Source: Podarcis muralis
Taxonomy: Eukaryota
Direction of reading: 5' to 3'
Length of the DNA stretch: 64,000 bases
Assembly: GCF_964188315.1 (NCBI RefSeq)
Contig: NC_135656.1
Span: forward strand, 116,002,001-116,066,000
Shown piece after piece: positions 2 through 63,999 of this stretch. The position numbers and the translations under genes are program-made. The notes under the pieces are model-generated. The model searched no databases. It saw only the letters and a program-made list of their open reading frames with translations, and was not told the DNA's origin. The first letter of the stretch is position 1, and each line of letters begins with the position of its first letter.

Positions 2-622
2 AAATGCCCAAACTGTGGGAAAAGCTTCAGGCAAATATCTTACTTTATTAAGCACCACCAAACCCACCTTGCAGATGAGGGGATGCATGTGGAAGAGAAA
101 CCATATAAATGCTCTGATTGTGGGAAAGGTTTTGGTGAGAAAGCGAGCCTCGGCAGACACCAGAGAATCCACACTGGAGAGAAGCCCTTTAAATGCTCGG
201 ACTGTGGGAAAAGCTTCTGCCTGAAATCGAATCTTGTTGTCCACTTGAGAATCCACACCGGTGAGAAGCCATATAAATGCTCTGAGTGTGGGAAGAGCTT
301 CAACCAGACGTCAAGTCTTCATAATCACGAGAGAACCCACAAAGGGGAGGAACCATATAAATGTTTAGAGTGTGGGAAAAGCTTCAACAGACCTTCGCAA
401 CTTAAGGCACATGAGAGAATCCACACTGGAGAGAAACCATACCGGTGTTCACTGTGTGGGAAAGGCTTTATTTACAACCACCACCTTGTGAGACACCAGA
501 GAAATCACACAGGAGAGAAACCGTATAAATGCCCAGGTTGTGGGAAAGAATTCAGCCTCAGATCGACCCTTATTAAACATCAAAGAATCCACATGGAAGG
601 GACACAATTAAAAAATACGTAA
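2..622 (+). CDS. Gene A: 3' part of a C2H2 zinc-finger exon (7 fingers in window), 5'-partial
   Basis: Frame open from base 2 (KCPNCGKSF...) through ORF 83..622; CxxC-x12-HxxxH repeats with TGEKP linkers; TAA at 620-622. Confidence 0.93.
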
Positions 623-7709: not shown

Positions 7710-10183
7710 ATAATGGAGATGTGAAGAATAATCTCAAGGTAGAAATGTCTGAACAACAGAAACAGATTGAGATATTGGTGAAACCACTGGAAGAGAACGT
7801 GTCTCAGTGCCATGTCAAGGCAGAAGCCGCTGAACAGCAACATGGATTGTCAAGCCAACATGGGAAGCCCATGGGGTTGGGAGTGGGTGAGTCCACCCAG
7901 GGTGAGGAAAGCTTCAAGGACCAAAGCGAAATCTCGGCCCAGGGAGAGATGGAAAAAGACAAGGGACTAGTAATTTTAGAAGAAGAGAAGAATGCAAATC
8001 TCGTTACTTGTGGGAGGAACCTTACGGCAGTGAAATTGTATGGATGCTCAGACGGTGGAAACTCCTCTTGTATGACCTCTGAAAATCAATGGGATCATAC
8101 TGCAAGCGAGGAAATATACACATCTTTGGACTTTGGGGACTCCTTTGGTATGGATGCTGCCTTTATCAAGCATTGTGGAACCCACACAGGAGACAAAACG
8201 TTTCAGTGCTTGGACTGTGGGAAGAGCTGTGAAACAAAAAGCCAGTTGCTTGCGCATATGAAGATGCACACAGAGGGAAACCCACTTAGATGCACCATCT
8301 GTGGGAAGAGCTTCTCTCAGAACAGAGACCTCTCTACTAATGAGAGAATCCACACAGAAGACAAAATGTTTATGTGCTCAGAATGCAATAAATCCTGCCC
8401 CAACAACACTGAGCTTGGACGTCCCCAACCCCAGACAGGGGAGGAACCATATAAATGTTTAGACTGTGGGAGATCCTTCACTCTGAACTCTGACTTTCGT
8501 AAACATCACAGAACCCACACGGGAGGAAAACCACATAAATGCCCAGACTGTGGCAAGACTTTTGATAAGAAGTTTAAGCTAGTGACGCATGTGAGAATCC
8601 ATACTGGGGAGAAACCTTTTAAGTGTTTGGACTGTGGGAAAAGCTTTGCTCAGAAGGGGAACCTTGTGGTTCACGAGAGAAGCCATACTGGGGAGAAACC
8701 ATACAAGTGCTTGGATTGCGAGAAGTCCTTCAGTGTGAATGCAGACCTTATTAGACATCACAGAATACACACAGGGGAAAAGCCATTCAAATGCCCAGAG
8801 TGTGGGAAATTCTTCAGGACACACTCTGAAATGTTCAGACATCAGAGAACTCACCCAGGAAACAAACCATACGACTGCTGGGACTGTGGCAAAACCTTTA
8901 GTCAGGAAGCCCACCTCGTGGCACACCTGAGAATCCACACTGGGGAGAAGCCCTACAAATGCCCAGACTGTCGGCAAAGCTTTGCCCAGAAAGGGAACCT
9001 TATTCTTCATCAGAGGACCCACATGGAAGAGAAGCCGTATAAATGCTTGGACTGTGAGAAATCCTTCCGTGCAAAATCTAAGCTCATAGAGCACCAGAGG
9101 CTTCACACCGGGGAGACGCCCTATGATTGCTCAGACTGCGGTAAAAGCTTCAGCCGGAAAGGGAGCCTCCTTGCCCACATGCACTTCCATTCCGGGAAGA
9201 AGCCGTATGAATGCTCCATTTGTGGGAAATCCTTCATTATGAACTCTGATCTCCTTAGACATCAGAGAACTCACACAGGAGAGAAACCGTACAAGTGCTC
9301 AGATTGCGAGAAAAGCTTTAGTCGGAAAGACGGCCTGCTCAAACACCTGGTAATCCATTCTGGGACAGAATTGCACATTCAGGAAAAGCCATACGAATGC
9401 TTGCACTGCGGCAGGAGTTACAATTACAAACAGAACCTCATTGTGCATAGGAGAACTCACACTGGAGAAAAGAGATTTAAATGCACAGACTGCGGTAAAA
9501 CCTTCAACACAAACTCTGAACTTACCAAACATCGGAGAATGCACACGGGGGAGAAGCCGTACAAGTGCTCCGATTGTGGGAAAAGCTTCGCCCAGAGGGG
9601 AGGCCTGGTTGCCCACAAGAGGACTCACACGGGAGAGAAGCCGTACAAATGCACCGTTTGTGGGAAATGTTTTAGTCTGAGCTCTTGCCTGATTAGACAC
9701 CAGCAAATCCACACAGGGGAGAAACCCTATCAGTGCCCAGACTGCGGACAGTGCTTTACTCACAAAAGGAACCTTGTCAAACACGCTGCCAGCCACCAAG
9801 AAGAAAAACCATATAACTGCTCAGACTGTGGGAAAAGTTTTGGGATAAGTTATCACCTCGTTCAGCACCAGCAAATCCACTCAGGAGAGAAACCATATAA
9901 ATGCTTGGAATGTGGGCAGAGTTTCACTCGCAAGAGAAACCTTGTGGTACATGTGAGAAGCCACACGTCAGAGAAGCTCCACAAATGCCCAGACTGTGGG
10001 AAAAGTTTCCCTCACAAAAATAATCTTGTCGAGCATATGGGAATGCATGCAGGGGAGAAACTGCAGGAGTGCCCGGAATGTGGGGAAAGTTTCACTGATC
10101 TCCTTGTTCTTATTAAGCACAGAAGAATCCACACAGAGACAGCCTTGGAGGAATCTTCCTATTGGGAGAAGATACTTGGTTGA
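7710..10183 (+). CDS. Gene B zinc-finger exon: acidic spacer plus 23 C2H2 positions (21 intact)
   Basis: ORF 7721..10183; acceptor ctcttccttccatcag|AT at 7709/7710 (phase 1); first in-frame ATG at 7745. Confidence 0.93.
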
Positions 10184-13597: not shown

Positions 13598-15611
13598 TAG
13601 AACTAACTTAGTTGGTCTTTAAGGTGCTACTGGAAGGAATTTTTTTTGTTTTGACTATGGCAGACCAACACGGCTACCCATCTGTAACAAAAACTTTCTC
13701 TGTTTACCGTTATCTAGGATTGCCCTGTTAAGATGCTTACATTTAGAGGTAGGGGGCATATTTTGGATTGGATTGTTTTCCTCATTTATATTTGGCCTTT
13801 TCCTCCAAGGAACTAGTGGTGGAGTGTTCATTTATTTTTATTTATTTATTTAATTGAATTTATATACCGCCCTTTCCCCGGGGGTCTCAGGGCGGTTCAC
13901 AGAATAAAATCAAGATATAAAACCACAAAATACATAATAAAAATGAAAACAACAACCCAATAGCCACCCCCTCTGTTTTCTCCTCACAACAACCCTTGCA
14001 GCGGTTCTCAACCTTTGGGTCCCCAGATGTTGTTGGACTACAACTCCCATCATCCCTGAGCTCTGGCCTTGCTAGCTAGGGGTGATGGGAGTTGTAGTTC
14101 AACAACATCTGGGGACCCACAGGTTGAGAAAAGCTGCTAGAGGAAGGCCAGAATGAGAGATCGTGACCGAATGAAGGTCACTCAAGCCCCATCTGCACTA
14201 TACTTTTATATCGGTAGGATACCACTTTAAACAGTCATGGCGTCTCTCAAAAGATCATTGGAACTGCATTTTGTTAAAGGTTCCGAGGGTTGTTAGAGTA
14301 CCCACAGAGCTAAAATCCTCAGGGTGGTTTAAGGAGAAACGCTTCTTCCCAAGGAAGGGCCTCCTCCAGATGCCGTCTTACCTGGAAGTCCACTCCTGTG
14401 GTGGTGGTGCAGTTGATGGAGAGCTGGACTAAGACCTTGGAGACCACTCAGCCATGATACTCACTGGGTGAGCTTGGGCTCAGTCACAATCTCTCAGCCT
14501 AAATTATCTCACAGGTCACACCCCTTGAACTTCTTGGGGAAAGGTGGGATAAAAATGTAGCAATAAAAGAGGAGGAATAATGAAGGAATTGGGCCTTTAG
14601 TGTTGTGGCACCTACTGTTTGGAATGCCCTCTTGTTGATTATTATAAAGGTGTTGCCTCTGTTGTCTTTTCGGCACCTACTCAGTCTGCCACTGGATTGG
14701 ATTTTTTTGGGGTGTGCGTATCACTTGTTGTTTGCTGCCCTGGGCTCCTTTGGGAAGAGGGATGGGGGTATAAATTTAATAAAGCAAAAAATTAAAATAA
14801 ATAAATTCTTCAACTCAGCAGGTTATGAAAGATGACAACATGAAAGAAGTTAAAATGGAGAACCATGAAAAAGGAGCCAGGTTTCCATGAGGTCTGAGGC
14901 TGGTGAGGGTGGACAGACTCTTGCTGGGAGGACAATCTCATGTCCCCTGACCAAACTGCAGTCTGTGCAGGTAAGGGAACAGGGAGAACCCACAGCTATT
15001 TCTCAAATATTTTCTGATGCCACAATATTTATAGCTGTTAAGAGATTCTGTTCAAGAGACTAGGGCTGTGTGAATGCTACACCTTTAAAGCACAGTCTTT
15101 CCCTCAGTGAATTCTGGGCACTGTAGTTTGTTAAGGGTTGCGGATAATTGTAACTGTGGGGTGGAAACTGCAATGCCCAGAATTCTTGTGAAGGAAATAA
15201 CGTGTTTCTCCTGTTTAGTGTATACACAGCCATATGCAATAAATGCCCCTTAGAGAGCCCTAAAGACAGGCTGCATACACACCATACGTTTAAAGCACCT
15301 TTAAAGCACACGACTCCCTCCAAAGAAGTCTGGGAATTGTAGTTTGTGAAGAGTGTTGGGAATTGTAGCTCTGTGATGGGGAAATTACAGTTTCTGCGAT
15401 TCTTGGGGGGAAGCCGTGTGATTTAAATGTATGGTGTGTCTGTAGCCTTTAGGTGTCTTAGTACCATTGGCTTTGTTTAAAGATATACAAGCAGAATCAT
15501 ACTAAAGGGTTATGCCTACAAGGAACTTCCAAAAGGAACAGCTGTGGCAGAATCATTCTCCAAGTCTTCAATCTCACTTTCAGTTAATTCCAGCTAGAAA
15601 CCTCCCTTGCT

Positions 15612-33224: not shown

Positions 33225-33983
33225 ATGGCGGAAGGGAGGGAGGGGGAGCTGCCGGCCCCAGATCTCCGCTTCCAGGCGGTGCTGGATCAGGAATTGAAGC
33301 TGGGTGTGAAAACAGAGAGGAAGGACCCAGCAGGTCCGAAGTCTGAGATGGGATCCAAGGGACTGAGGAAAAAGCCCCACCTTTCTGCTCAGGCGGGACC
33401 TGCGGGGTGCGAGGGCCTGCAGCAGGTCTGGGAGGCCCAGTGGCAGGCCTTCCTCAAGGCGATGGAGTCACCCCACTCTGAGGCGGGGAGCTCGCAGCTG
33501 GCGGAGTTGGCTCCCTGGGCGGACCTGAGGACTTCCCTAGCCCCTTTTGAGGCCATCACTGCAGCCAGCCAGCCTCCAAAGGAAGGGTACGTCCTTCCGA
33601 TCCTCAACGGGCCGAGCCACCAGGTCCACGTCAAGCTTGATCTGAGAGAAAAGGGCCCCTACACCAAAGTAAAGGAGGAGAAGGAGGCGCTCAGCACAGA
33701 GGGCCACCGGCAGCGCTTTAGGCAGTCGCACTGCCACCAGGCTGAGAGCCCCCACCAGGCCTGCAGCCGGCTCTGGGAGCTTTGCCGCCAGTGGTTGAAA
33801 CCGGAGAGACGTAGCAAAGAGGAGATCCTGGACTTGCTGGTCTTGGAGCAGTTCCTGGATGTCCTGCCTCGAGGGATCCAGAGTCGGGTGAAGGATCAGG
33901 CTCCTGAAACCTGTGCCCAGGCGGTGGCCCTGGCGGAGAATTTCTTGCCGGCTCAGGGAGAAGCAGGGAGTTGGGAAGAGCAG
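33225..33983 (+). CDS. Gene E coding exon 1: SCAN domain with eroded Gag N-terminal region
   Basis: RQRFRQ...LWELCRQWLKPERRSKEEILDLLVLEQFLDVLP...QAVALAE; acceptor at 33000/33001; donor CAG|GTGAGG, phase 0. Confidence 0.9.
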
Positions 33984-35304: not shown

Positions 35305-35512
35305 TGAAGATGATGATGATTTATACCTCGCCCATCTGGGCGGCTCCCAACAGAATATTAAAAACATAATAAAATATCAAACGTTTAAAAACTTCCCGAA
35401 ACAGGGATACTTTCAGATGTCTTCTAAAAGTCAGATAGTTGTTTATTTCCTTAACATCTGATGGGAGGGCGTTCCACAGGGCAGGTGCCACTACCGAGAA
35501 GGCCCTCTGCCT
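35305..35512 (-). mobile_element. L2 3' fragment (another at about 34980-35125)
   Basis: [23 protein letters not shown] on the minus strand. Confidence 0.75.
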
Positions 35513-35577
35513 GGTACAATACTTGATACTTAAGGTGTTGATGTTGTTATATTTCATCTCTCTCCTTCTTCCTTCAG

Positions 35578-36395
35578 GTAAGCAGTATGTGATGCAGAAA
35601 GAGGATCACGGGCAAGAAAGCTCTGAGCAAGAACCGCAAGGGATGCTGGAGGAGAGAGAGACAGCCAACGGTCTCAAGCACTGCAAGCAGGCGGGGTCGA
35701 ATGAGGGTCTGTGTGGGCCATGGAGGCAACAACAGGCAAGCTGTCCAAGGCAGAGGATGGATCAGCTCATTCCTAGCATGGGCCTTTACCAAGGACTGAG
35801 TGGACTTCTTACCGGGGAGAGGCCTGTGACCCTGACTGAATACAGACGGACTTCCAACTCCAAGGCGAGCGAGAGGACCGAGGCAGAAGAGAAACCCTTC
35901 AAATGCGTGGAGTGCGGGAAGGCCTTCCGCACAAAGGACAAGCTCATCCGACATCACAAGACCCACACGGGAGAGAAGCCGTACGGTTGCTTGGACTGCG
36001 GCAAATCCTTCAGCACTAAGTACGGGCTTTTCCGGCACTACCGAATCCACCGGGGAGAGAAGCCGTACGGATGCTCGTACTGCGGCAAGTTCTTCCGGAT
36101 GAACTACGACCTCATCCGCCACCACCGGGTCCACACGGGGGAGAAGCCCTTTGAGTGCTCGGACTGCGGGAAGTCCTTCGGCATGAACTCCGACCTCGTC
36201 AGACACCAGAGGATCCACACGGGGGAGAAGCCCTTCCAGTGCTCGGACTGCGGGAAAACTTTCAACGTCAAGGGCAGCCTCGTCTCCCACGTCCGGATAC
36301 ACAAGGGCCTGAAGCCGTACAGGTGCGGCGAGTGCGGGAAATGCTTCAACCAGAGTTCGAAACTGAAGGCCCATGTGAGAATCCATGCGAGGTAG
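35578..36395 (+). CDS. Gene E coding exon 3: 6 C2H2 fingers
   Basis: Acceptor cttcttccttcag|GT (phase 1); ORF 35439..36395. Confidence 0.92.
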
Positions 36396-42987: not shown

Positions 42988-43151
42988 NNNNNNNNNNNNN
43001 NNNNNNNNNNNNNNNNNNNNNNNNNNNNNNNNNNNNNNNNNNNNNNNNNNNNNNNNNNNNNNNNNNNNNNNNNNNNNNNNNNNNNNNNNNNNNNNNNNNN
43101 NNNNNNNNNNNNNNNNNNNNNNNNNNNNNNNNNNNNNNNNNNNNNNNNNNN
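42988..43151. other. Assembly gap (164 N) inside the predicted 5'UTR part of the gene F SCAN exon
   Basis: N run; candidate acceptor at 42839/42840 lies upstream and ATG at 43265 downstream. Confidence 0.97.
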
Positions 43152-43264: not shown

Positions 43265-43990
43265 ATGGACATGCGGAACGTGACAGGCTCCAAAGCATGG
43301 GAAGAAATGGAAGGTGTAGCAAAAGCCCCACATCACAGGGGCACGGGGCAGTTCCTTATTGGGACACCTTCCCATTATATAAAACATGAGCCGGAAGAAG
43401 GGGCGCTGGAACGCTGGGAAGCCCAGTTGCAGGAGTTTCTGAGGATGCTGCAGGCTCCCAACTCAGGATGCAGGAACCTACAGATATCTGAGGAGCCCTC
43501 CCCATGGGAGGATGCTAAGGCCTTCCTGGCCTCCTTTGAGCAAGTAGCCTCGGCCTGCCAGTGGCCTCGGGACAAGTGGGTGGCCCTCCTCCTGCCGGCT
43601 CTCAGCGGAGAGCCTGAGCAGGCCTTCAGCGGCCTCAGTGCCCAGGACAAGGGAGACTACAGGAAGGTGAAGGCGGCCATCTTGGAAGGGGAGGCCATTG
43701 CGAGGGAGAAGCAGCGGCAGCACTTCAGGCAACTCCGCTATCGGGAGGCGGAGGGTCCCAGAGGCGTTTATGGACGGCTCCGAGAGCTTTGTGGCCAGTG
43801 GCTGAAAGTAGAGAGGCACACGAAGGATGAGATTCTGGAGCTGCTGATCTTGGAGCAGCTCCTGAGCATCCTGCCGGGAGACATGCAGAGCTGGGTCAGG
43901 GAGCGAAAGCCAGAGACCTGCGCCCAGGCGGTGGCCCTGGCGGAGAGCTTCCTCTTGGGGCAGGACGAGATGGAGGGTCCGGAACAGAAG
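43265..43990 (+). CDS. Gene F coding exon 1: extended SCAN (Gypsy Gag capsid NTD-like plus SCAN)
   Basis: FLASFEQVASACQWPRDKWVALLLPALSGE...KVKAAIL precedes SCAN RQHFRQ...ILEQLLSILP; donor AAG|GTGAGA, phase 0. Confidence 0.9.
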
Positions 43991-44452
43991 GTGAGAAATT
44001 CTGAAGGTGTACAGCAGCAGTGGGGAAGCTCTCTCTGGCAACTCGGCCCTCCAGATGTTTTGGGACTACAACTCCCATCATATCTAGCTAACAGGACCAG
44101 TGGTCAGGGATGATGGGAATTGTAGTCCCAAAACATCTGGAGGGCAGAGTTTGGGGATGACTGATTTAGACCTTCCAGGACTCTCCATTGGGCCTGTGTT
44201 CAGCTAATGGTGAGTGTTTGCGAATGACGATCACCTGGTTGTTAGAGCTTGCACACGGCTGCATGTGTGGGCACCTCATCATGTCACTGTGATGTCGAGG
44301 GATTGACAGGTGGGCAGCCCCGCCTACCTGCCAAATTTCGCCTGTGGGGTGGGAGGGGGAGATAAGTATCCAGACTGCTAGACACATCTAGTTCTTCACC
44401 TGCTGGCATATGGTGTCTATGATATGGTGCTGAAATGGATTTCTATCGGTTA

Positions 44453-46562: not shown

Positions 46563-47416
46563 GTAATGAGCAGGTATTGGAGGATGAGACAAATACACTC
46601 CACCAGGAAGGTTCTGTGCAAGGAGAAGCAAACAATGCCTGTCTGGGAAGAGAGGATGAATTCCATGACCATCAAAAGCAAATAATGTTTGAGAATCAGC
46701 CAGGGCTGTTGAATGATGAGAGAAGCTATGAGAGTGGTCTGGTGGAAAAATCCACTTTCTATGCAGACGTTAGCAGAGAAGAGAGAGAATCCGCTGAATC
46801 ACAAAGAACAGAGTCTACTGAGGTACAAAAAGCATCAACTGACTGTCAAAGAAACTTTGAACGGAGCTCAGACCTTATGGTACAGCAGAGCATTCACATC
46901 AGAGAGAAGCCGTACCTGTCATTCTATTGCGGAAACAGTTTCATTCAGACGCAGGGCCTTCTTGCACATGAGAGAACCCACACAGGATTATGGAACATGT
47001 ATAATTACCCTAATGGTGGGAAAAACTTCAGTTGCAGTTCAGGCTCCATGCAGCACATGAGAATCCACACAGGAGAATCTCTGTACACGTGCTCTCACTG
47101 CGGCAAAAACTTTGACAATTGTTCAGTCTTACAGGAACACGTCAGGCTGCACACACTGGAGACACCGTACAAGTGCTCAGACTGTGGGAAGAGCTTCGAC
47201 AAAAAGCGTTACCTGAACAACCACGTGAGGAAGCACAGAGGGGAGAAGCCGTATGAGTGCCTACAATGCGGGAAAAGCTTCCCTATAAAGTCCAAACTTG
47301 TAAAACACGAGATAATACACATGAGGGAGAAGCCATACAAGTGCGCCCTCTGTGGGAAAACATTCGTTCGGAAGACAGACCTTTGTGCACATGAGAAAAT
47401 CCACACAGTACAGTAG
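46563..47416 (+). CDS. Gene F coding exon 3: 3 decayed plus 4 intact C2H2 fingers
   Basis: Acceptor ttattcctacag|GT; ORF 46577..47416. Confidence 0.9.
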
Positions 47417-53415: not shown

Positions 53416-54126
53416 ATGGAGGAGCAGGACACGGCTGGCTCCAAATTGTGGCAGGGGATGCAGGGGGAAGGAAAGAGAGTCCCGCAAGAGGTCCATGTGG
53501 GGAGCATTGGGACCTTCGTGAGCAAGGATCTCCCACCACAGATCAAGCGGGAGCCAGAGGAGGGGCTGCTGCAGCAGCACTGGGAGACCCAGTGGCAGCA
53601 GTTCTTGCAGAGCGTGCAGGCCCCAGACTCCAGGTCACAGCCTCATCCCGCCTCCAGAGAGGAAGCCAAGGAGATCCAGGCCTCATTCCAAGGTGTCACT
53701 AATGCCTCGCAGTGGTCGAGGGGTGGCTGGGTCACCCAGGCTGTGCCGGGCCTCGGCGGGGAAGCCCAGAAGGTCTACCGAAGCCTGGACTCCTTTGTGA
53801 AGGTGAAGGAAGAGGCCGCAAGCGAGGGGGCCCTGCGGCCGGAGACACGGCGCCAGCGCTTCCGCCACTTCTGCTACCAGGAGGCCAAAGGGCCCCGCGA
53901 GGTTTGCCAAAGGCTCCGGGAGCTGTGCTGCCAGTGGCTGAAACCGGAGAGGCAGACCAAGGAGCAGATCCTGGAGCTGCTGATCCTGGAGCAGTTCCTG
54001 ATCATCCTGCCCCTGGAGATGCAGAGCTGGGTACGCGAGAGCGAGCCGGAGAGCTGCGCCCAGGCAGTGGCCCTGGCAGAAGGCTTCCTGATGGGGCGGC
54101 AAAACGGCAAGAGATGCGGCCAGCAG
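53416..54126 (+). CDS. Gene G coding exon 1: SCAN with partly deleted Gag N-terminal region
   Basis: [48 protein letters not shown]; acceptor at 53230/53231; donor CAG|GTGAGA, phase 0. Confidence 0.92.
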
Positions 54127-56224: not shown

Positions 56225-57039
56225 CCGACGAGCAGGTGGGAGATAACCTTCATCACCAGGAAGGCTCCGACCAGGTGGAGCCGCATGATGCATCGATGAG
56301 AATCGGCTTGGTCTTCCAGAATTACGAGGAGGGAACTGTGTTGTTGGGTCAGAAGGCGCTGGCAGGCAAACAGGACCCCGAAAGTAGAACGGGTGGAGCT
56401 GTAGCCTGTTGGGAAGGCGGCTTCCGCAGGAAGGAACCCAAAGCCCAGGATTGTGTGGAGGCGAAACCGCACAGCGACACCAACGGAAGCTTCCGGCCGA
56501 GCCAAAGCGTCCTTAAGCGGGAAGCAGTCTCCAGGGACGAGAAACCGTTCAAGTCCTCGGCCTTTCCTCCGAGCCCAGGCCTCCTCGTCCCCCACGAGAG
56601 GAGCCACGCGGGGGACAGGCGATATAAATGCTCTGAGTGTGGGAAGAGTTTCAACCAAAAGCGGTACCTGGCGGGGCACCGGAGAATCCACCGAGGGGAG
56701 ACCCCATACAAATGCTCAGACTGCGGGAGGAGCTTCAACCGGAAGTGGAACCTCATTGCTCACAAGAGAATCCACTCGGGGGAGAACCCGTACAAATGCT
56801 CGGACTGCGGGAAAACATTCAGCCAGAAGGGTAACCTTATGACCCATGTGAGGATCCACACGGGGGAGAAGCCCTACAAGTGCGCCGAGTGCGGGAAGCG
56901 CTTCAGCCAGAGGGCAGGCCTCACCTCGCACAGGAAGAGCCACATAAAAATCAACAGCGTAGGGAAAGCCACCTTGGGGTATCTGATTTTCCTAAACCTC
57001 AGCGAATCTGGGCAAGAGGGGAACCCTGTAGAAGATTAG
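56225..57039 (+). CDS. Gene G coding exon 3: 1 decayed plus 4 intact C2H2 fingers
   Basis: Acceptor cttatctccgcag|CC; ORF 56236..57039. Confidence 0.9.
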
Positions 57040-63345: not shown

Positions 63346-63999
63346 CTACGTTGTCCCCTCTGTTGTACCAAATGCTTCGGTATGCATTTTTTCGTGTACA
63401 AGGAGTTTGGCCCTCTGAGAGAAGCTTTTCATGCAAAGCAGGCACTTGAAAGGCTTCTCTCCGGTGTGGATTCTCATGTGTGTCCTAAGGTTCCCCTTTT
63501 GGCTGAAGCTTTTCCCACACTCAGGGCACTTGAAGGGAGTCTCTCCCGTGTGGGTCCTCTCATGTATGACGAGCTTGGACTTCTGGGAGAAACTTTTGTC
63601 GCAGTGACTGCATTTGTACGGGATTTCCCCCGTGTGGCTCCGCTCGTGGGCAATGAGGCTGGCCCTCTGAGAGAAGCTTTTCCCGCAATAAAGGCACAGA
63701 GGCGGGTTCTCCCCCGTGTGGATTCTCTCGTGAGTGATAAGGTAGCGTTTCCGGTTGAAGCTCTTCCCGCAGTGCGAACACTTGTAGGGCCTCTCACCCG
63801 TGTGGGTTCTCACGTGTTCCCTGAAGAGTGAACCGCGGCTGAAGCTTTTCCCACAGTAGGAGCACTTATATGGGGCCTCCCCGGTGTGGATCCTCGTGTG
63901 TACCAGGAGGTCCCACGTCCGAGTGAAGCTATTCCCGCAGAAAGAACACTTATAGGGTTTCTCTCCAGCGGGGATTCTCTGATGGTTAAGAGTGGGCCT
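63346..63999 (-). CDS. Gene H: 3' part of a C2H2 exon (7 intact fingers), 5'-partial
   Basis: Frame open from 63999 through ORF 63346..63813; TGEKP-type linkers. Confidence 0.92.
   Translation of the reverse strand, partial: RPTLNHQRIPAGEKPYKCSFCGNSFTRTWDLLVHTRIHTGEAPYKCSYCGKSFSRGSLFREHVRTHTGERPYKCSHCGKSFNRKRYLITHERIHTGENPPLCLYCGKSFSQRASLIAHERSHTGEIPYKCSHCDKSFSQKSKLVIHERTHTGETPFKCPECGKSFSQKGNLRTHMRIHTGEKPFKCLLCMKSFSQRAKLLVHEKMHTEAFGTTEGTT

What the first reader, a model, noticed from the sequence alone, without database searches (positions are those of the whole stretch)
43265..43990. Gene F keeps a near-complete Gypsy capsid (NTD plus SCAN), while E and G show stepwise erosion
Seen: F has PWEDAKAFLASFEQVASACQWPRDKWVALLLPALSGEPEQAFSGLSAQDKGDYRKVKAAIL directly before SCAN. 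G has a shortened version ([38 protein letters not shown]). E is more eroded (PWADLRTSLAPFEAIT..LPILNG..YTKVKEE). Established: SCAN derives from the capsid C-terminal domain of Gmr1-like Gypsy Gag, with extended homology in lizards (Emerson and Thomas 2011), and two-domain capsids of Arc, PEG10 and PNMA can oligomerise. Inference: the cluster captures domestication in progress. F may form higher-order capsid-like oligomers coupled to a DNA-binding array. This is the best candidate here for an undescribed system.
Basis: partly seen in the sequence, partly recalled or inferred. Interest (0 to 1): 0.7.

Follow-up and report, generated by a model that had tools for sequence, protein, structure and literature searches.

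The report
Ordinary extended-SCAN zinc-finger gene
Gene F is a well-conserved lizard/snake zinc-finger gene whose first coding exon keeps both lobes of an old retrotransposon capsid (the "extended SCAN" domain described in Anolis in 2011). Its neighbours E and G keep the SCAN lobe but have let the other lobe decay, so this is a known kind of gene and not a new system.

Summary
Window 43265-43990 (+) is one open exon of 242 codons ending at an AAG|GTGAG donor. It holds a Pfam SCAN domain (aa 148-234) directly preceded by the quoted segment.

That segment is a conserved domain. 83 squamate proteins carry it, from geckos to snakes, Anolis, Varanus and Elgaria. It is at least as conserved as SCAN. 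F keeps 35 of 35 near-invariant positions and scores 128.5 bits, against a family median of 131.

AlphaFold gives a confident four-helix lobe. After the SCAN structures, the whole-exon model matches two-lobe Arc, Ty3 and MLV capsids, but only weakly, and no gag sequence family matches.

This is the ESCAN (extended SCAN) domain that Emerson and Thomas (2011) described in Anolis zinc-finger genes, so F is not an undescribed system.

E and G have decayed N-lobes (28 and 36 bits; 17 and 14 of 35 positions) and intact SCAN domains. On a SCAN tree they lie outside the intact group, each next to a Varanus protein, and other squamates show many similar or worse decays. Three old paralogue lineages sit side by side here; this is not a stepwise series within the cluster.

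Capsid-like oligomerisation was not tested.

The parts
43265..43990 (+). Gene F, first coding exon (242 codons): N-tail, pre-helix, capsid-NTD-like lobe and SCAN. Together the last two make the ESCAN domain.
   Evidence: ORF and donor AAG|GTGAGA; Pfam SCAN; relatives.
43394..43456 (+). F pre-helix (aa 44-64, motif like WEAQxQEFL). It is predicted helical and is kept even in relatives whose N-lobe is gone.
   Evidence: AF2 helix 45-63; 6 of 6 conserved positions kept in E, F and G; pre-helix HMM positive in eroded relatives.
43499..43705 (+). F capsid-NTD-like lobe (aa 79-147), four helices. This is the N-terminal half of ESCAN.
   Evidence: HMM 128.5 bits and 35 of 35 conserved positions; pLDDT 78-92 with helices 84-98, 102-112, 115-129 and 132-147; Arc N-lobe TM 0.65 at 2.7 A over 62 columns, and two-lobe Arc, Ty3 and MLV capsid matches.
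43706..43966 (+). F SCAN domain (aa 148-234), the homologue of the capsid C-terminal domain.
   Evidence: Pfam PF02023 at E=3e-36; PDB ZNF24, PEG3 and ZNF174 SCAN structures.
46563..47416 (+). F zinc-finger exon: 4 canonical C2H2 fingers preceded by 2 degenerate ones. The join to the SCAN exon was not established.
   Evidence: ORF; finger count and the acceptor ...cctacag|GT. The phases do not fit a direct join with the phase-0 donor at 43990.
42988..43151 (.). Run of N (164 bases), 113 bases upstream of the F start codon. It was left as it is.
33225..33983 (+). Gene E, SCAN-bearing exon. The decayed N-lobe remnant is at 33510-33698 and the intact SCAN at 33699-33962.
   Evidence: Pfam SCAN; N-lobe HMM 27.6 bits and 17 of 35 positions; donor CAG|GTGAGG.
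35439..36395 (+). Gene E zinc-finger exon (6 canonical fingers).
53416..54126 (+). Gene G, SCAN-bearing exon. The decayed N-lobe remnant is at 53641-53838, with a 5-residue deletion, and the intact SCAN at 53839-54099.
   Evidence: Pfam SCAN E=7e-42; N-lobe HMM 36.4 bits and 14 of 35 positions; donor CAG|GTGAGA.
56236..57039 (+). Gene G zinc-finger exon (4 canonical fingers).

Best explanation
F is a normal, selectively maintained member of the squamate ESCAN-zinc-finger family, a DNA-binding protein. Its N-terminal module is a domesticated two-lobe capsid protein of a Gmr1-like Ty3/Gypsy element: a four-helix N-lobe (aa 79-147) fused by a continuous helix to the SCAN domain, which corresponds to the capsid C-terminal domain (aa 148-234). 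Shown here: the domain layout, the fold prediction, family membership and strong conservation of the N-lobe in F's lineage. Inferred: SCAN mediates dimerisation with itself or with paralogues, as solved SCAN domains do; the N-lobe supplies a second protein-contact surface that is kept by selection; and the short finger array tethers the complex to DNA. E and G belong to other, older paralogue lineages in which the N-lobe is no longer constrained and is decaying towards the SCAN-only state that mammals have. The short pre-helix and SCAN stay conserved in all three.
For: Pfam SCAN is present in all three exons. The N-extension of F recovers 83 proteins, all squamate and nearly all with SCAN directly after it; they include Anolis carolinensis at 56-61% identity. 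Mean conservation of the N-lobe is 0.80, against 0.76 for SCAN, 0.51 for the linker and 0.41 for the N-tail. Between F and its nearest kin, N-lobe identity is 68-89% and always at least equal to SCAN identity (59-81%), with no gaps. F keeps 35 of 35 near-invariant positions. AF2 gives four helices with pLDDT 78-92. In Foldseek, after the SCAN structures come two-lobe Arc (7r24_A: 155 columns, probability 0.97, E=0.04), Ty3 capsid 6r24_B, MLV capsids, and the Arc N-lobe (6tno_A: TM 0.65, 2.7 A). The Ty3 capsid N-domain is a four-helix 'CA fold' shared with SCAN (PMC6525542). ESCAN is defined as a full-length Gmr1-like capsid fused to zinc fingers in Anolis (PMC3406341 citing Emerson and Thomas 2011). 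For E and G, N-lobe identity to their nearest kin is only 22-33% with gaps, against 56-82% for SCAN. On the SCAN tree, 61 of 62 intact forms fall in one group, F sits with Elgaria, Candoia and Varanus proteins (96*), and E and G lie outside that group next to Varanus proteins.
Against: No sequence-level match of the N-lobe to any gag or capsid family was found. This covers Pfam on the N-terminal parts of E, F and G, Pfam on all 62 aligned sequences, and PDB searches with a profile and with the single sequence. Foldseek with the N-lobe model alone gave nothing significant (E>=1), although MLV capsid N-domains, the Arc N-lobe and PEG10 capsid populate the list. The viral structure library gave only weak hits. 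I could not compare F directly with a Gmr1-like Gag sequence, and the primary 2011 paper is not held in the library. The predicted continuous helix between the lobes differs from the flexible linker of true capsid proteins. The exon join to the finger array is not established.
Confidence: 0.85

Rival explanations
1. One reading: because it keeps both capsid lobes, F assembles into higher-order capsid-like oligomers (hexamer or pentamer lattices) coupled to a DNA-binding array.
For: Both lobes are present and the N-lobe is under strong constraint. Two-lobe relatives such as Arc, PNMA2 and Ty3 appear among the structural matches and are known to form capsids (established knowledge).
Against: Nothing here tests oligomeric state. 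Solved SCAN domains are domain-swapped dimers (PDB 1y7q title). The model shows a continuous helix joining the lobes, unlike the hinge that capsid lattices use. The N-lobe may equally be a peptide-binding lobe, as in Arc.
Confidence: 0.1
2. Capsid-targeting reading, the speculation of Emerson and Thomas as I recall it from the abstract: the ESCAN module binds Gag or capsid of related retroelements, bringing or trapping the host protein there as a restriction-like factor.
For: The module derives from capsid. The literature reports that lizard SCAN-ZF proteins are predicted to bind Gmr1-like elements (PMC4592553).
Against: There is no experimental evidence. Gmr1-like elements are reported as depleted in reptilian genomes while SCAN-ZF genes have expanded markedly in squamates (bioRxiv 10.1101/2025.03.03.638093). 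It was not testable here.
Confidence: 0.1
3. The N-terminal segment is a host-born helical extension unrelated to capsid, and the capsid resemblance is generic helical similarity.
For: There are no gag family hits. The N-lobe-only Foldseek search was not significant.
Against: Whole-exon matches to Arc (155 columns), Ty3 (159) and MLV capsids (232) are long enough to take in both lobes. Helix count and size fit the four-helix capsid fold. Published ESCAN homology to Gmr1-like capsid exists. It is not a duplicated SCAN: hhalign between the N-lobe and SCAN profiles finds nothing.
Confidence: 0.07
4. F is a decaying gene whose first exon merely happens to be still open.
For: Two of the six finger units are degenerate, and the splice phases of the two exons do not fit directly.
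Against: F keeps 35 of 35 conserved N-lobe positions and 25 of 26 SCAN positions, has an intact donor, and has orthologue-like proteins in several families. Degenerate leading fingers are common in such genes (own knowledge).
Confidence: 0.03

Closest known systems
ESCAN (extended SCAN) zinc-finger genes of Anolis (Emerson and Thomas, J Virol 2011)
   Same: A SCAN domain preceded without a break by the rest of a Gmr1-like capsid, at the N-terminus of a C2H2 finger gene. Anolis proteins carry the same extension at 56-61% identity.
   Different: None in kind. F is another species' copy, with a short array of 4 canonical and 2 degenerate fingers.
Mammalian SCAN zinc-finger proteins (ZNF24, ZNF174, MZF1, PEG3, Zfp206)
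   Same: The SCAN domain: F aa 150-229 aligns to them at 42-48% identity.
   Different: Mammalian, monotreme and alligator hits cover only the SCAN part and have about 36-57 residues before it. They show no N-lobe and no pre-helix signal.
Two-lobe domesticated capsids: Arc, PNMA2, PEG10; and the Ty3 capsid
   Same: N-lobe plus C-lobe, each a small helical capsid fold. The structural matches are weak but recurrent.
   Different: There is no detectable sequence similarity. F has no nucleocapsid or coiled-coil parts and is fused to zinc fingers instead. The lobes are predicted to be joined by one continuous helix. Assembly is unknown.

Membership tests
ESCAN-zinc-finger family | SCAN domain (Pfam PF02023) | tested here: met
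   E=3e-36, aa 148-234
ESCAN-zinc-finger family | Conserved N-terminal extension contiguous with SCAN and shared with the Anolis proteins | tested here: met
   83 squamate hits including Anolis carolinensis and A. sagrei; N-lobe HMM 128.5 bits, family range 115-141
ESCAN-zinc-finger family | The extension is homologous to the N-terminal part of Gmr1-like Gag capsid | tested here: inconclusive
   Structure only: four helices, and two-lobe Arc, Ty3 and MLV capsid matches at E=0.04-0.5. No Gmr1-like Gag sequence was in reach, and no Pfam gag hit was found.
ESCAN-zinc-finger family | C2H2 finger array downstream in the same gene | tested here: met
   Finger exon on the same strand 2.6 kb downstream. 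The splice join itself is not established.
Ty3/Gypsy-type two-domain capsid protein | N-domain with the four-helix capsid core fold | tested here: inconclusive
   AF2 helices 84-98, 102-112, 115-129 and 132-147 at pLDDT 78-92. Arc N-lobe TM 0.65, but the E-values are not significant, including for the N-lobe alone.
Ty3/Gypsy-type two-domain capsid protein | C-domain with the capsid/SCAN fold | tested here: met
Ty3/Gypsy-type two-domain capsid protein | Sequence match to a gag/capsid family (Retrotrans_gag, Ty3_capsid and the like) | tested here: not met
   0 families for the N-terminal parts of E, F and G at E<=10. None among the 62 aligned sequences.
Ty3/Gypsy-type two-domain capsid protein | Self-assembly into hexamer/pentamer lattices | not testable with these tools
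Ty3/Gypsy-type two-domain capsid protein | Part of a Gag or Gag-Pol with protease, integrase and reverse transcriptase nearby | tested here: not met
   The only other Pfam matches in 62 aligned sequences are C2H2 fingers and KRAB in a few relatives. Relatives match only SCAN and finger exons in the window.

The most novel reading that the evidence does not exclude
Intact ESCAN modules such as F's use the conserved N-lobe to build higher-order, capsid-like or lattice-like assemblies on DNA, or to bind retroelement capsids. That function would be lost in E, G and all mammalian SCAN proteins. The cluster would then offer natural intact, half-decayed and decayed versions for comparison.
Probability: 0.1. 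Interest if true: 0.7.

Novelty: new member of a known kind. Interest (0 to 1): 0.22.

Why it matters
It matters little as a discovery, because ESCAN zinc-finger genes have been known in lizards since 2011. Two points are useful. First, in lineages that keep it, the N-lobe is at least as conserved as SCAN from geckos to snakes, so it has a function of its own, and nobody has determined what that is. Second, squamates hold a natural series of intact, partly decayed and fully decayed N-lobes with SCAN and a short upstream helix always kept. One 21-kb stretch here carries three of these states. That makes convenient material for biochemical comparison of what the second capsid lobe adds.

Tried and rejected
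- Pfam on the N-terminal parts of E, F and G, and on all 62 sequences of the family alignment: only SCAN, plus fingers or KRAB in a few relatives.
- NCBIfam: nothing.
- PDB sequence searches with the whole-exon profile and with the N-lobe alone: only SCAN chains or a designed protein.
- Foldseek with an N-lobe-only model: no significant match.
- Foldseek against viral predicted structures: only weak hits (E>=0.05), among them caulimovirus coat proteins, a metavirus ORF1 and retroviral Gag.
- hhalign of the N-lobe profile against the SCAN profile: no similarity, so the N-lobe is not a duplicated SCAN.
- Nei-Gojobori dN/dS among E, F and G: synonymous sites are saturated (dS 0.7-2.2), so the ratios are uninformative. 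dN is 0.55-0.65 in the N-lobe against 0.19-0.31 in SCAN.
- Word search with G's N-terminal part: blank, but limited to proteins of 141-448 aa.
- The primary 2011 paper could not be read.
- The large representative search was not run. An N-lobe-only profile could not be built by reference, and its 150-row output would be filled by squamate ESCAN proteins. The family identity was not open after the word search.
- No contig that I take for human was fetched. Human SCAN structures appear only as rows that the PDB tools returned.
- The N run at 42988-43151 was left untouched.

Full report
**What is there.** The window is a + strand cluster of C2H2 zinc-finger genes of a squamate reptile; every close relative found is from lizards or snakes. 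Three genes have a SCAN-bearing exon: E (33225-33983), F (43265-43990) and G (53416-54126). Each ends at a homologous CAG/AAG|GTGAG donor in phase 0. Each is followed 1.5-2.6 kb downstream by a finger exon. tblastn and a six-frame HMM scan find no other SCAN or N-lobe remnant in the 64 kb. Pfam places SCAN at F aa 148-234, E aa 159-246 and G aa 142-228. The F segment is therefore directly in front of SCAN, as stated. The 164-base N run at 42988-43151 was left as it is.

**The segment before SCAN is a real, conserved domain.** A word search restricted to F aa 40-147 returned 83 proteins. All are squamate: geckos, snakes, Anolis, Pogona, Phrynosoma, Varanus, Elgaria, lacertids, Rhineura and Tiliqua. 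Identity is 50-81%, and nearly all carry Pfam SCAN right after the match.

In an alignment with 59 of them (A2), mean conservation by region is as follows:

| Region of F | Mean conservation |
|---|---|
| N-lobe, aa 79-147 | 0.80 |
| SCAN | 0.76 |
| Linker, aa 65-78 | 0.51 |
| N-tail | 0.41 |

An HMM of aa 79-147 built without E, F and G gives F 128.5 bits; the family range is 115-141 and the median 131. F keeps 35 of 35 near-invariant positions. Against its nearest kin, F's N-lobe is 68-89% identical, never less than SCAN (59-81%), and has no gaps. This protein-level pattern shows purifying selection on the N-lobe. Among the three paralogues synonymous sites are saturated.

**Fold.** AlphaFold2 on the whole exon with the family alignment gave mean pLDDT 70.5. 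The model has:
- a disordered N-tail;
- a helix at aa 45-63;
- a confident lobe (pLDDT 78-92) with helices 84-98, 102-112, 115-129 and 132-147, the last running straight into the first SCAN helix;
- the SCAN helices.

In Foldseek against the PDB the SCAN structures come first. They are followed by:
- two-lobe Arc capsid domains (7r24_A: 155 columns, probability 0.97, E=0.04);
- immature and mature MLV capsid;
- the Ty3 capsid (6r24_B: 159 columns);
- the isolated Arc N-lobe (6tno_A: TM 0.65 by target, 2.7 A over 62 columns);
- PNMA2 and the PEG10 capsid.

The Ty3 paper describes each capsid domain as a four-helix 'CA fold' shared with SCAN (PMC6525542). That matches the helix count here.

The support is moderate, not decisive:
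- An N-lobe-only model (pLDDT 68.5) gave no significant match, although MLV capsid N-domains, the Arc N-lobe and PEG10 recur in its list.
- The viral library gave only weak hits.
- No gag family is detected by sequence in F or in any of the 62 aligned sequences.
- The N-lobe is not a copy of SCAN (hhalign).

**What it is called.** The literature already has this object. Emerson and Thomas (J Virol 2011) reported that SCAN derives from the C-terminal part of the capsid of Gmr1-like Gypsy/Ty3 elements. They reported that the ancestral host form was a full-length capsid, ESCAN (extended SCAN), and that Anolis has zinc-finger genes with either ESCAN or SCAN. I could not open the paper. I rely on its description in PMC3406341, PMC4592553 and the 2025 preprint 10.1101/2025.03.03.638093, and on my memory of the abstract. 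Anolis proteins are among the relatives that share F's extension. F is therefore an ordinary ESCAN-zinc-finger gene and not an undescribed system.

**E and G.** Their SCAN domains are in the family range (119.6 and 146.2 bits; 24 and 26 of 26 conserved positions). Their N-lobes score only 27.6 and 36.4 bits and keep 17 and 14 of 35 conserved positions. E has deletions of 3 and 3 residues; G has a deletion of 5. The decay is real, but the two are about equally decayed, so they do not form an ordered series.

The decay is also not a local, recent process:
- On a SCAN-domain tree (106 rows, 87 columns, quick search, so poorly resolved), 61 of 62 intact forms fall in one group (SH-aLRT 87).
- F sits with Elgaria, Candoia and Varanus proteins (96*).
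- G pairs with a Varanus protein (96*) and E sits near Varanus proteins (88). Both are outside the intact group.

Scoring all fetched relatives gives three classes. Intact N-lobes score 111-141 bits. Partial ones score 15-72 bits. A third class scores 5 bits or less although 110 or more residues still precede SCAN. The nearest kin of E and G are only 22-33% identical to them in the N-lobe, with gaps, against 56-82% in SCAN. Decay is still going on in G's lineage: its closest Varanus relative keeps a recognisable third-to-fourth-helix stretch exactly where G has its 5-residue deletion. Mammalian, monotreme and alligator hits cover only the SCAN part. The cluster thus places three old paralogue lineages side by side in different states. 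This is a useful comparison set, but it is not domestication caught in the act.

**How it most likely works.** Shown: the architecture and the constraint. Inferred: SCAN dimerises, as the solved domain-swapped SCAN dimers do (PDB 1y7q). The N-lobe adds a second, selected interaction surface, and the fingers bind DNA. F has 4 canonical fingers plus 2 degenerate ones. Nothing here tests either. The predicted continuous helix between the lobes differs from the hinge of assembling capsids.

**Limits.**
The phase-0 donor at 43990 and the best acceptor before the finger exon (about 46562/46563, which needs phase 1) do not fit, so a small exon is probably missing from my view.
- The large representative search was deliberately not run (reasons under Tried and rejected).
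- No human contig was met.

Noticed in passing
window 43394-43456 (F aa 44-64); E about 33396-33464; G about 53533-53613: A short helix upstream of the N-lobe (motif like WEAQWQEFL) keeps all 6 of its conserved positions in E, F and G. It is still detectable in most squamate relatives whose N-lobe has decayed beyond recognition. It is absent from the mammalian hits. Its role is unknown.
   Followed up: partly
window 43664-43672 (F), 33666-33674 (E), 53800-53808 (G): The tripeptide KVK at the end of the N-lobe is kept in E, F and G and in most, though not all, of the decayed relatives aligned here. Its codons read AAG|GTGAAG (AAA|GTAAAG in E), which looks like a splice donor. In decayed forms it reads VKEE, a sumoylation-like motif. 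Sixteen gene models from other squamates have the N-lobe but no SCAN, and most of these break off within a few residues of this point.
   Followed up: partly
proteins P0001 and P0004 (Naja naja, Gekko kuhli); P0030 (Thamnophis sirtalis): Some database models carry two tandem N-lobes without SCAN. One carries an N-lobe after pogo/Tc5-type HTH domains (precomputed Pfam PF13384, PF03221, PF04218). These are probably merged or mis-spliced gene models, but this was not checked.
   Followed up: no
window 46563-47416: In F's finger exon the first two finger units have lost their cysteine pairs, leaving 4 canonical fingers. E has 6 and G has 4. The three upstream genes (finger exons at 7721, 16805 and 25479) have 18-21 fingers and no SCAN exon anywhere in the window.
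   Followed up: partly
window 43990/43991 and about 46562/46563: The SCAN exon ends in phase 0, but the best acceptor of the finger exon needs phase 1. A small intervening exon, or another splice site, is unaccounted for. tblastn with relatives found none.
   Followed up: partly
window 44040-44151; core also at 14032, 24022, 34668, 52580, 52872, 52926, 61917: A 42-nt inverted repeat (95% complementary, 28 nt between the arms) lies just inside F's intron. Its core occurs 9 times in the window, against 0 expected by chance. It looks like a dispersed palindromic, MITE-like repeat.
   Followed up: partly
window 63346-63813 (- strand) and 83-622 (+ strand): Further C2H2 finger exons lie at both ends of the window. 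The one at the far end is on the opposite strand, so the cluster continues beyond the window.
   Followed up: no
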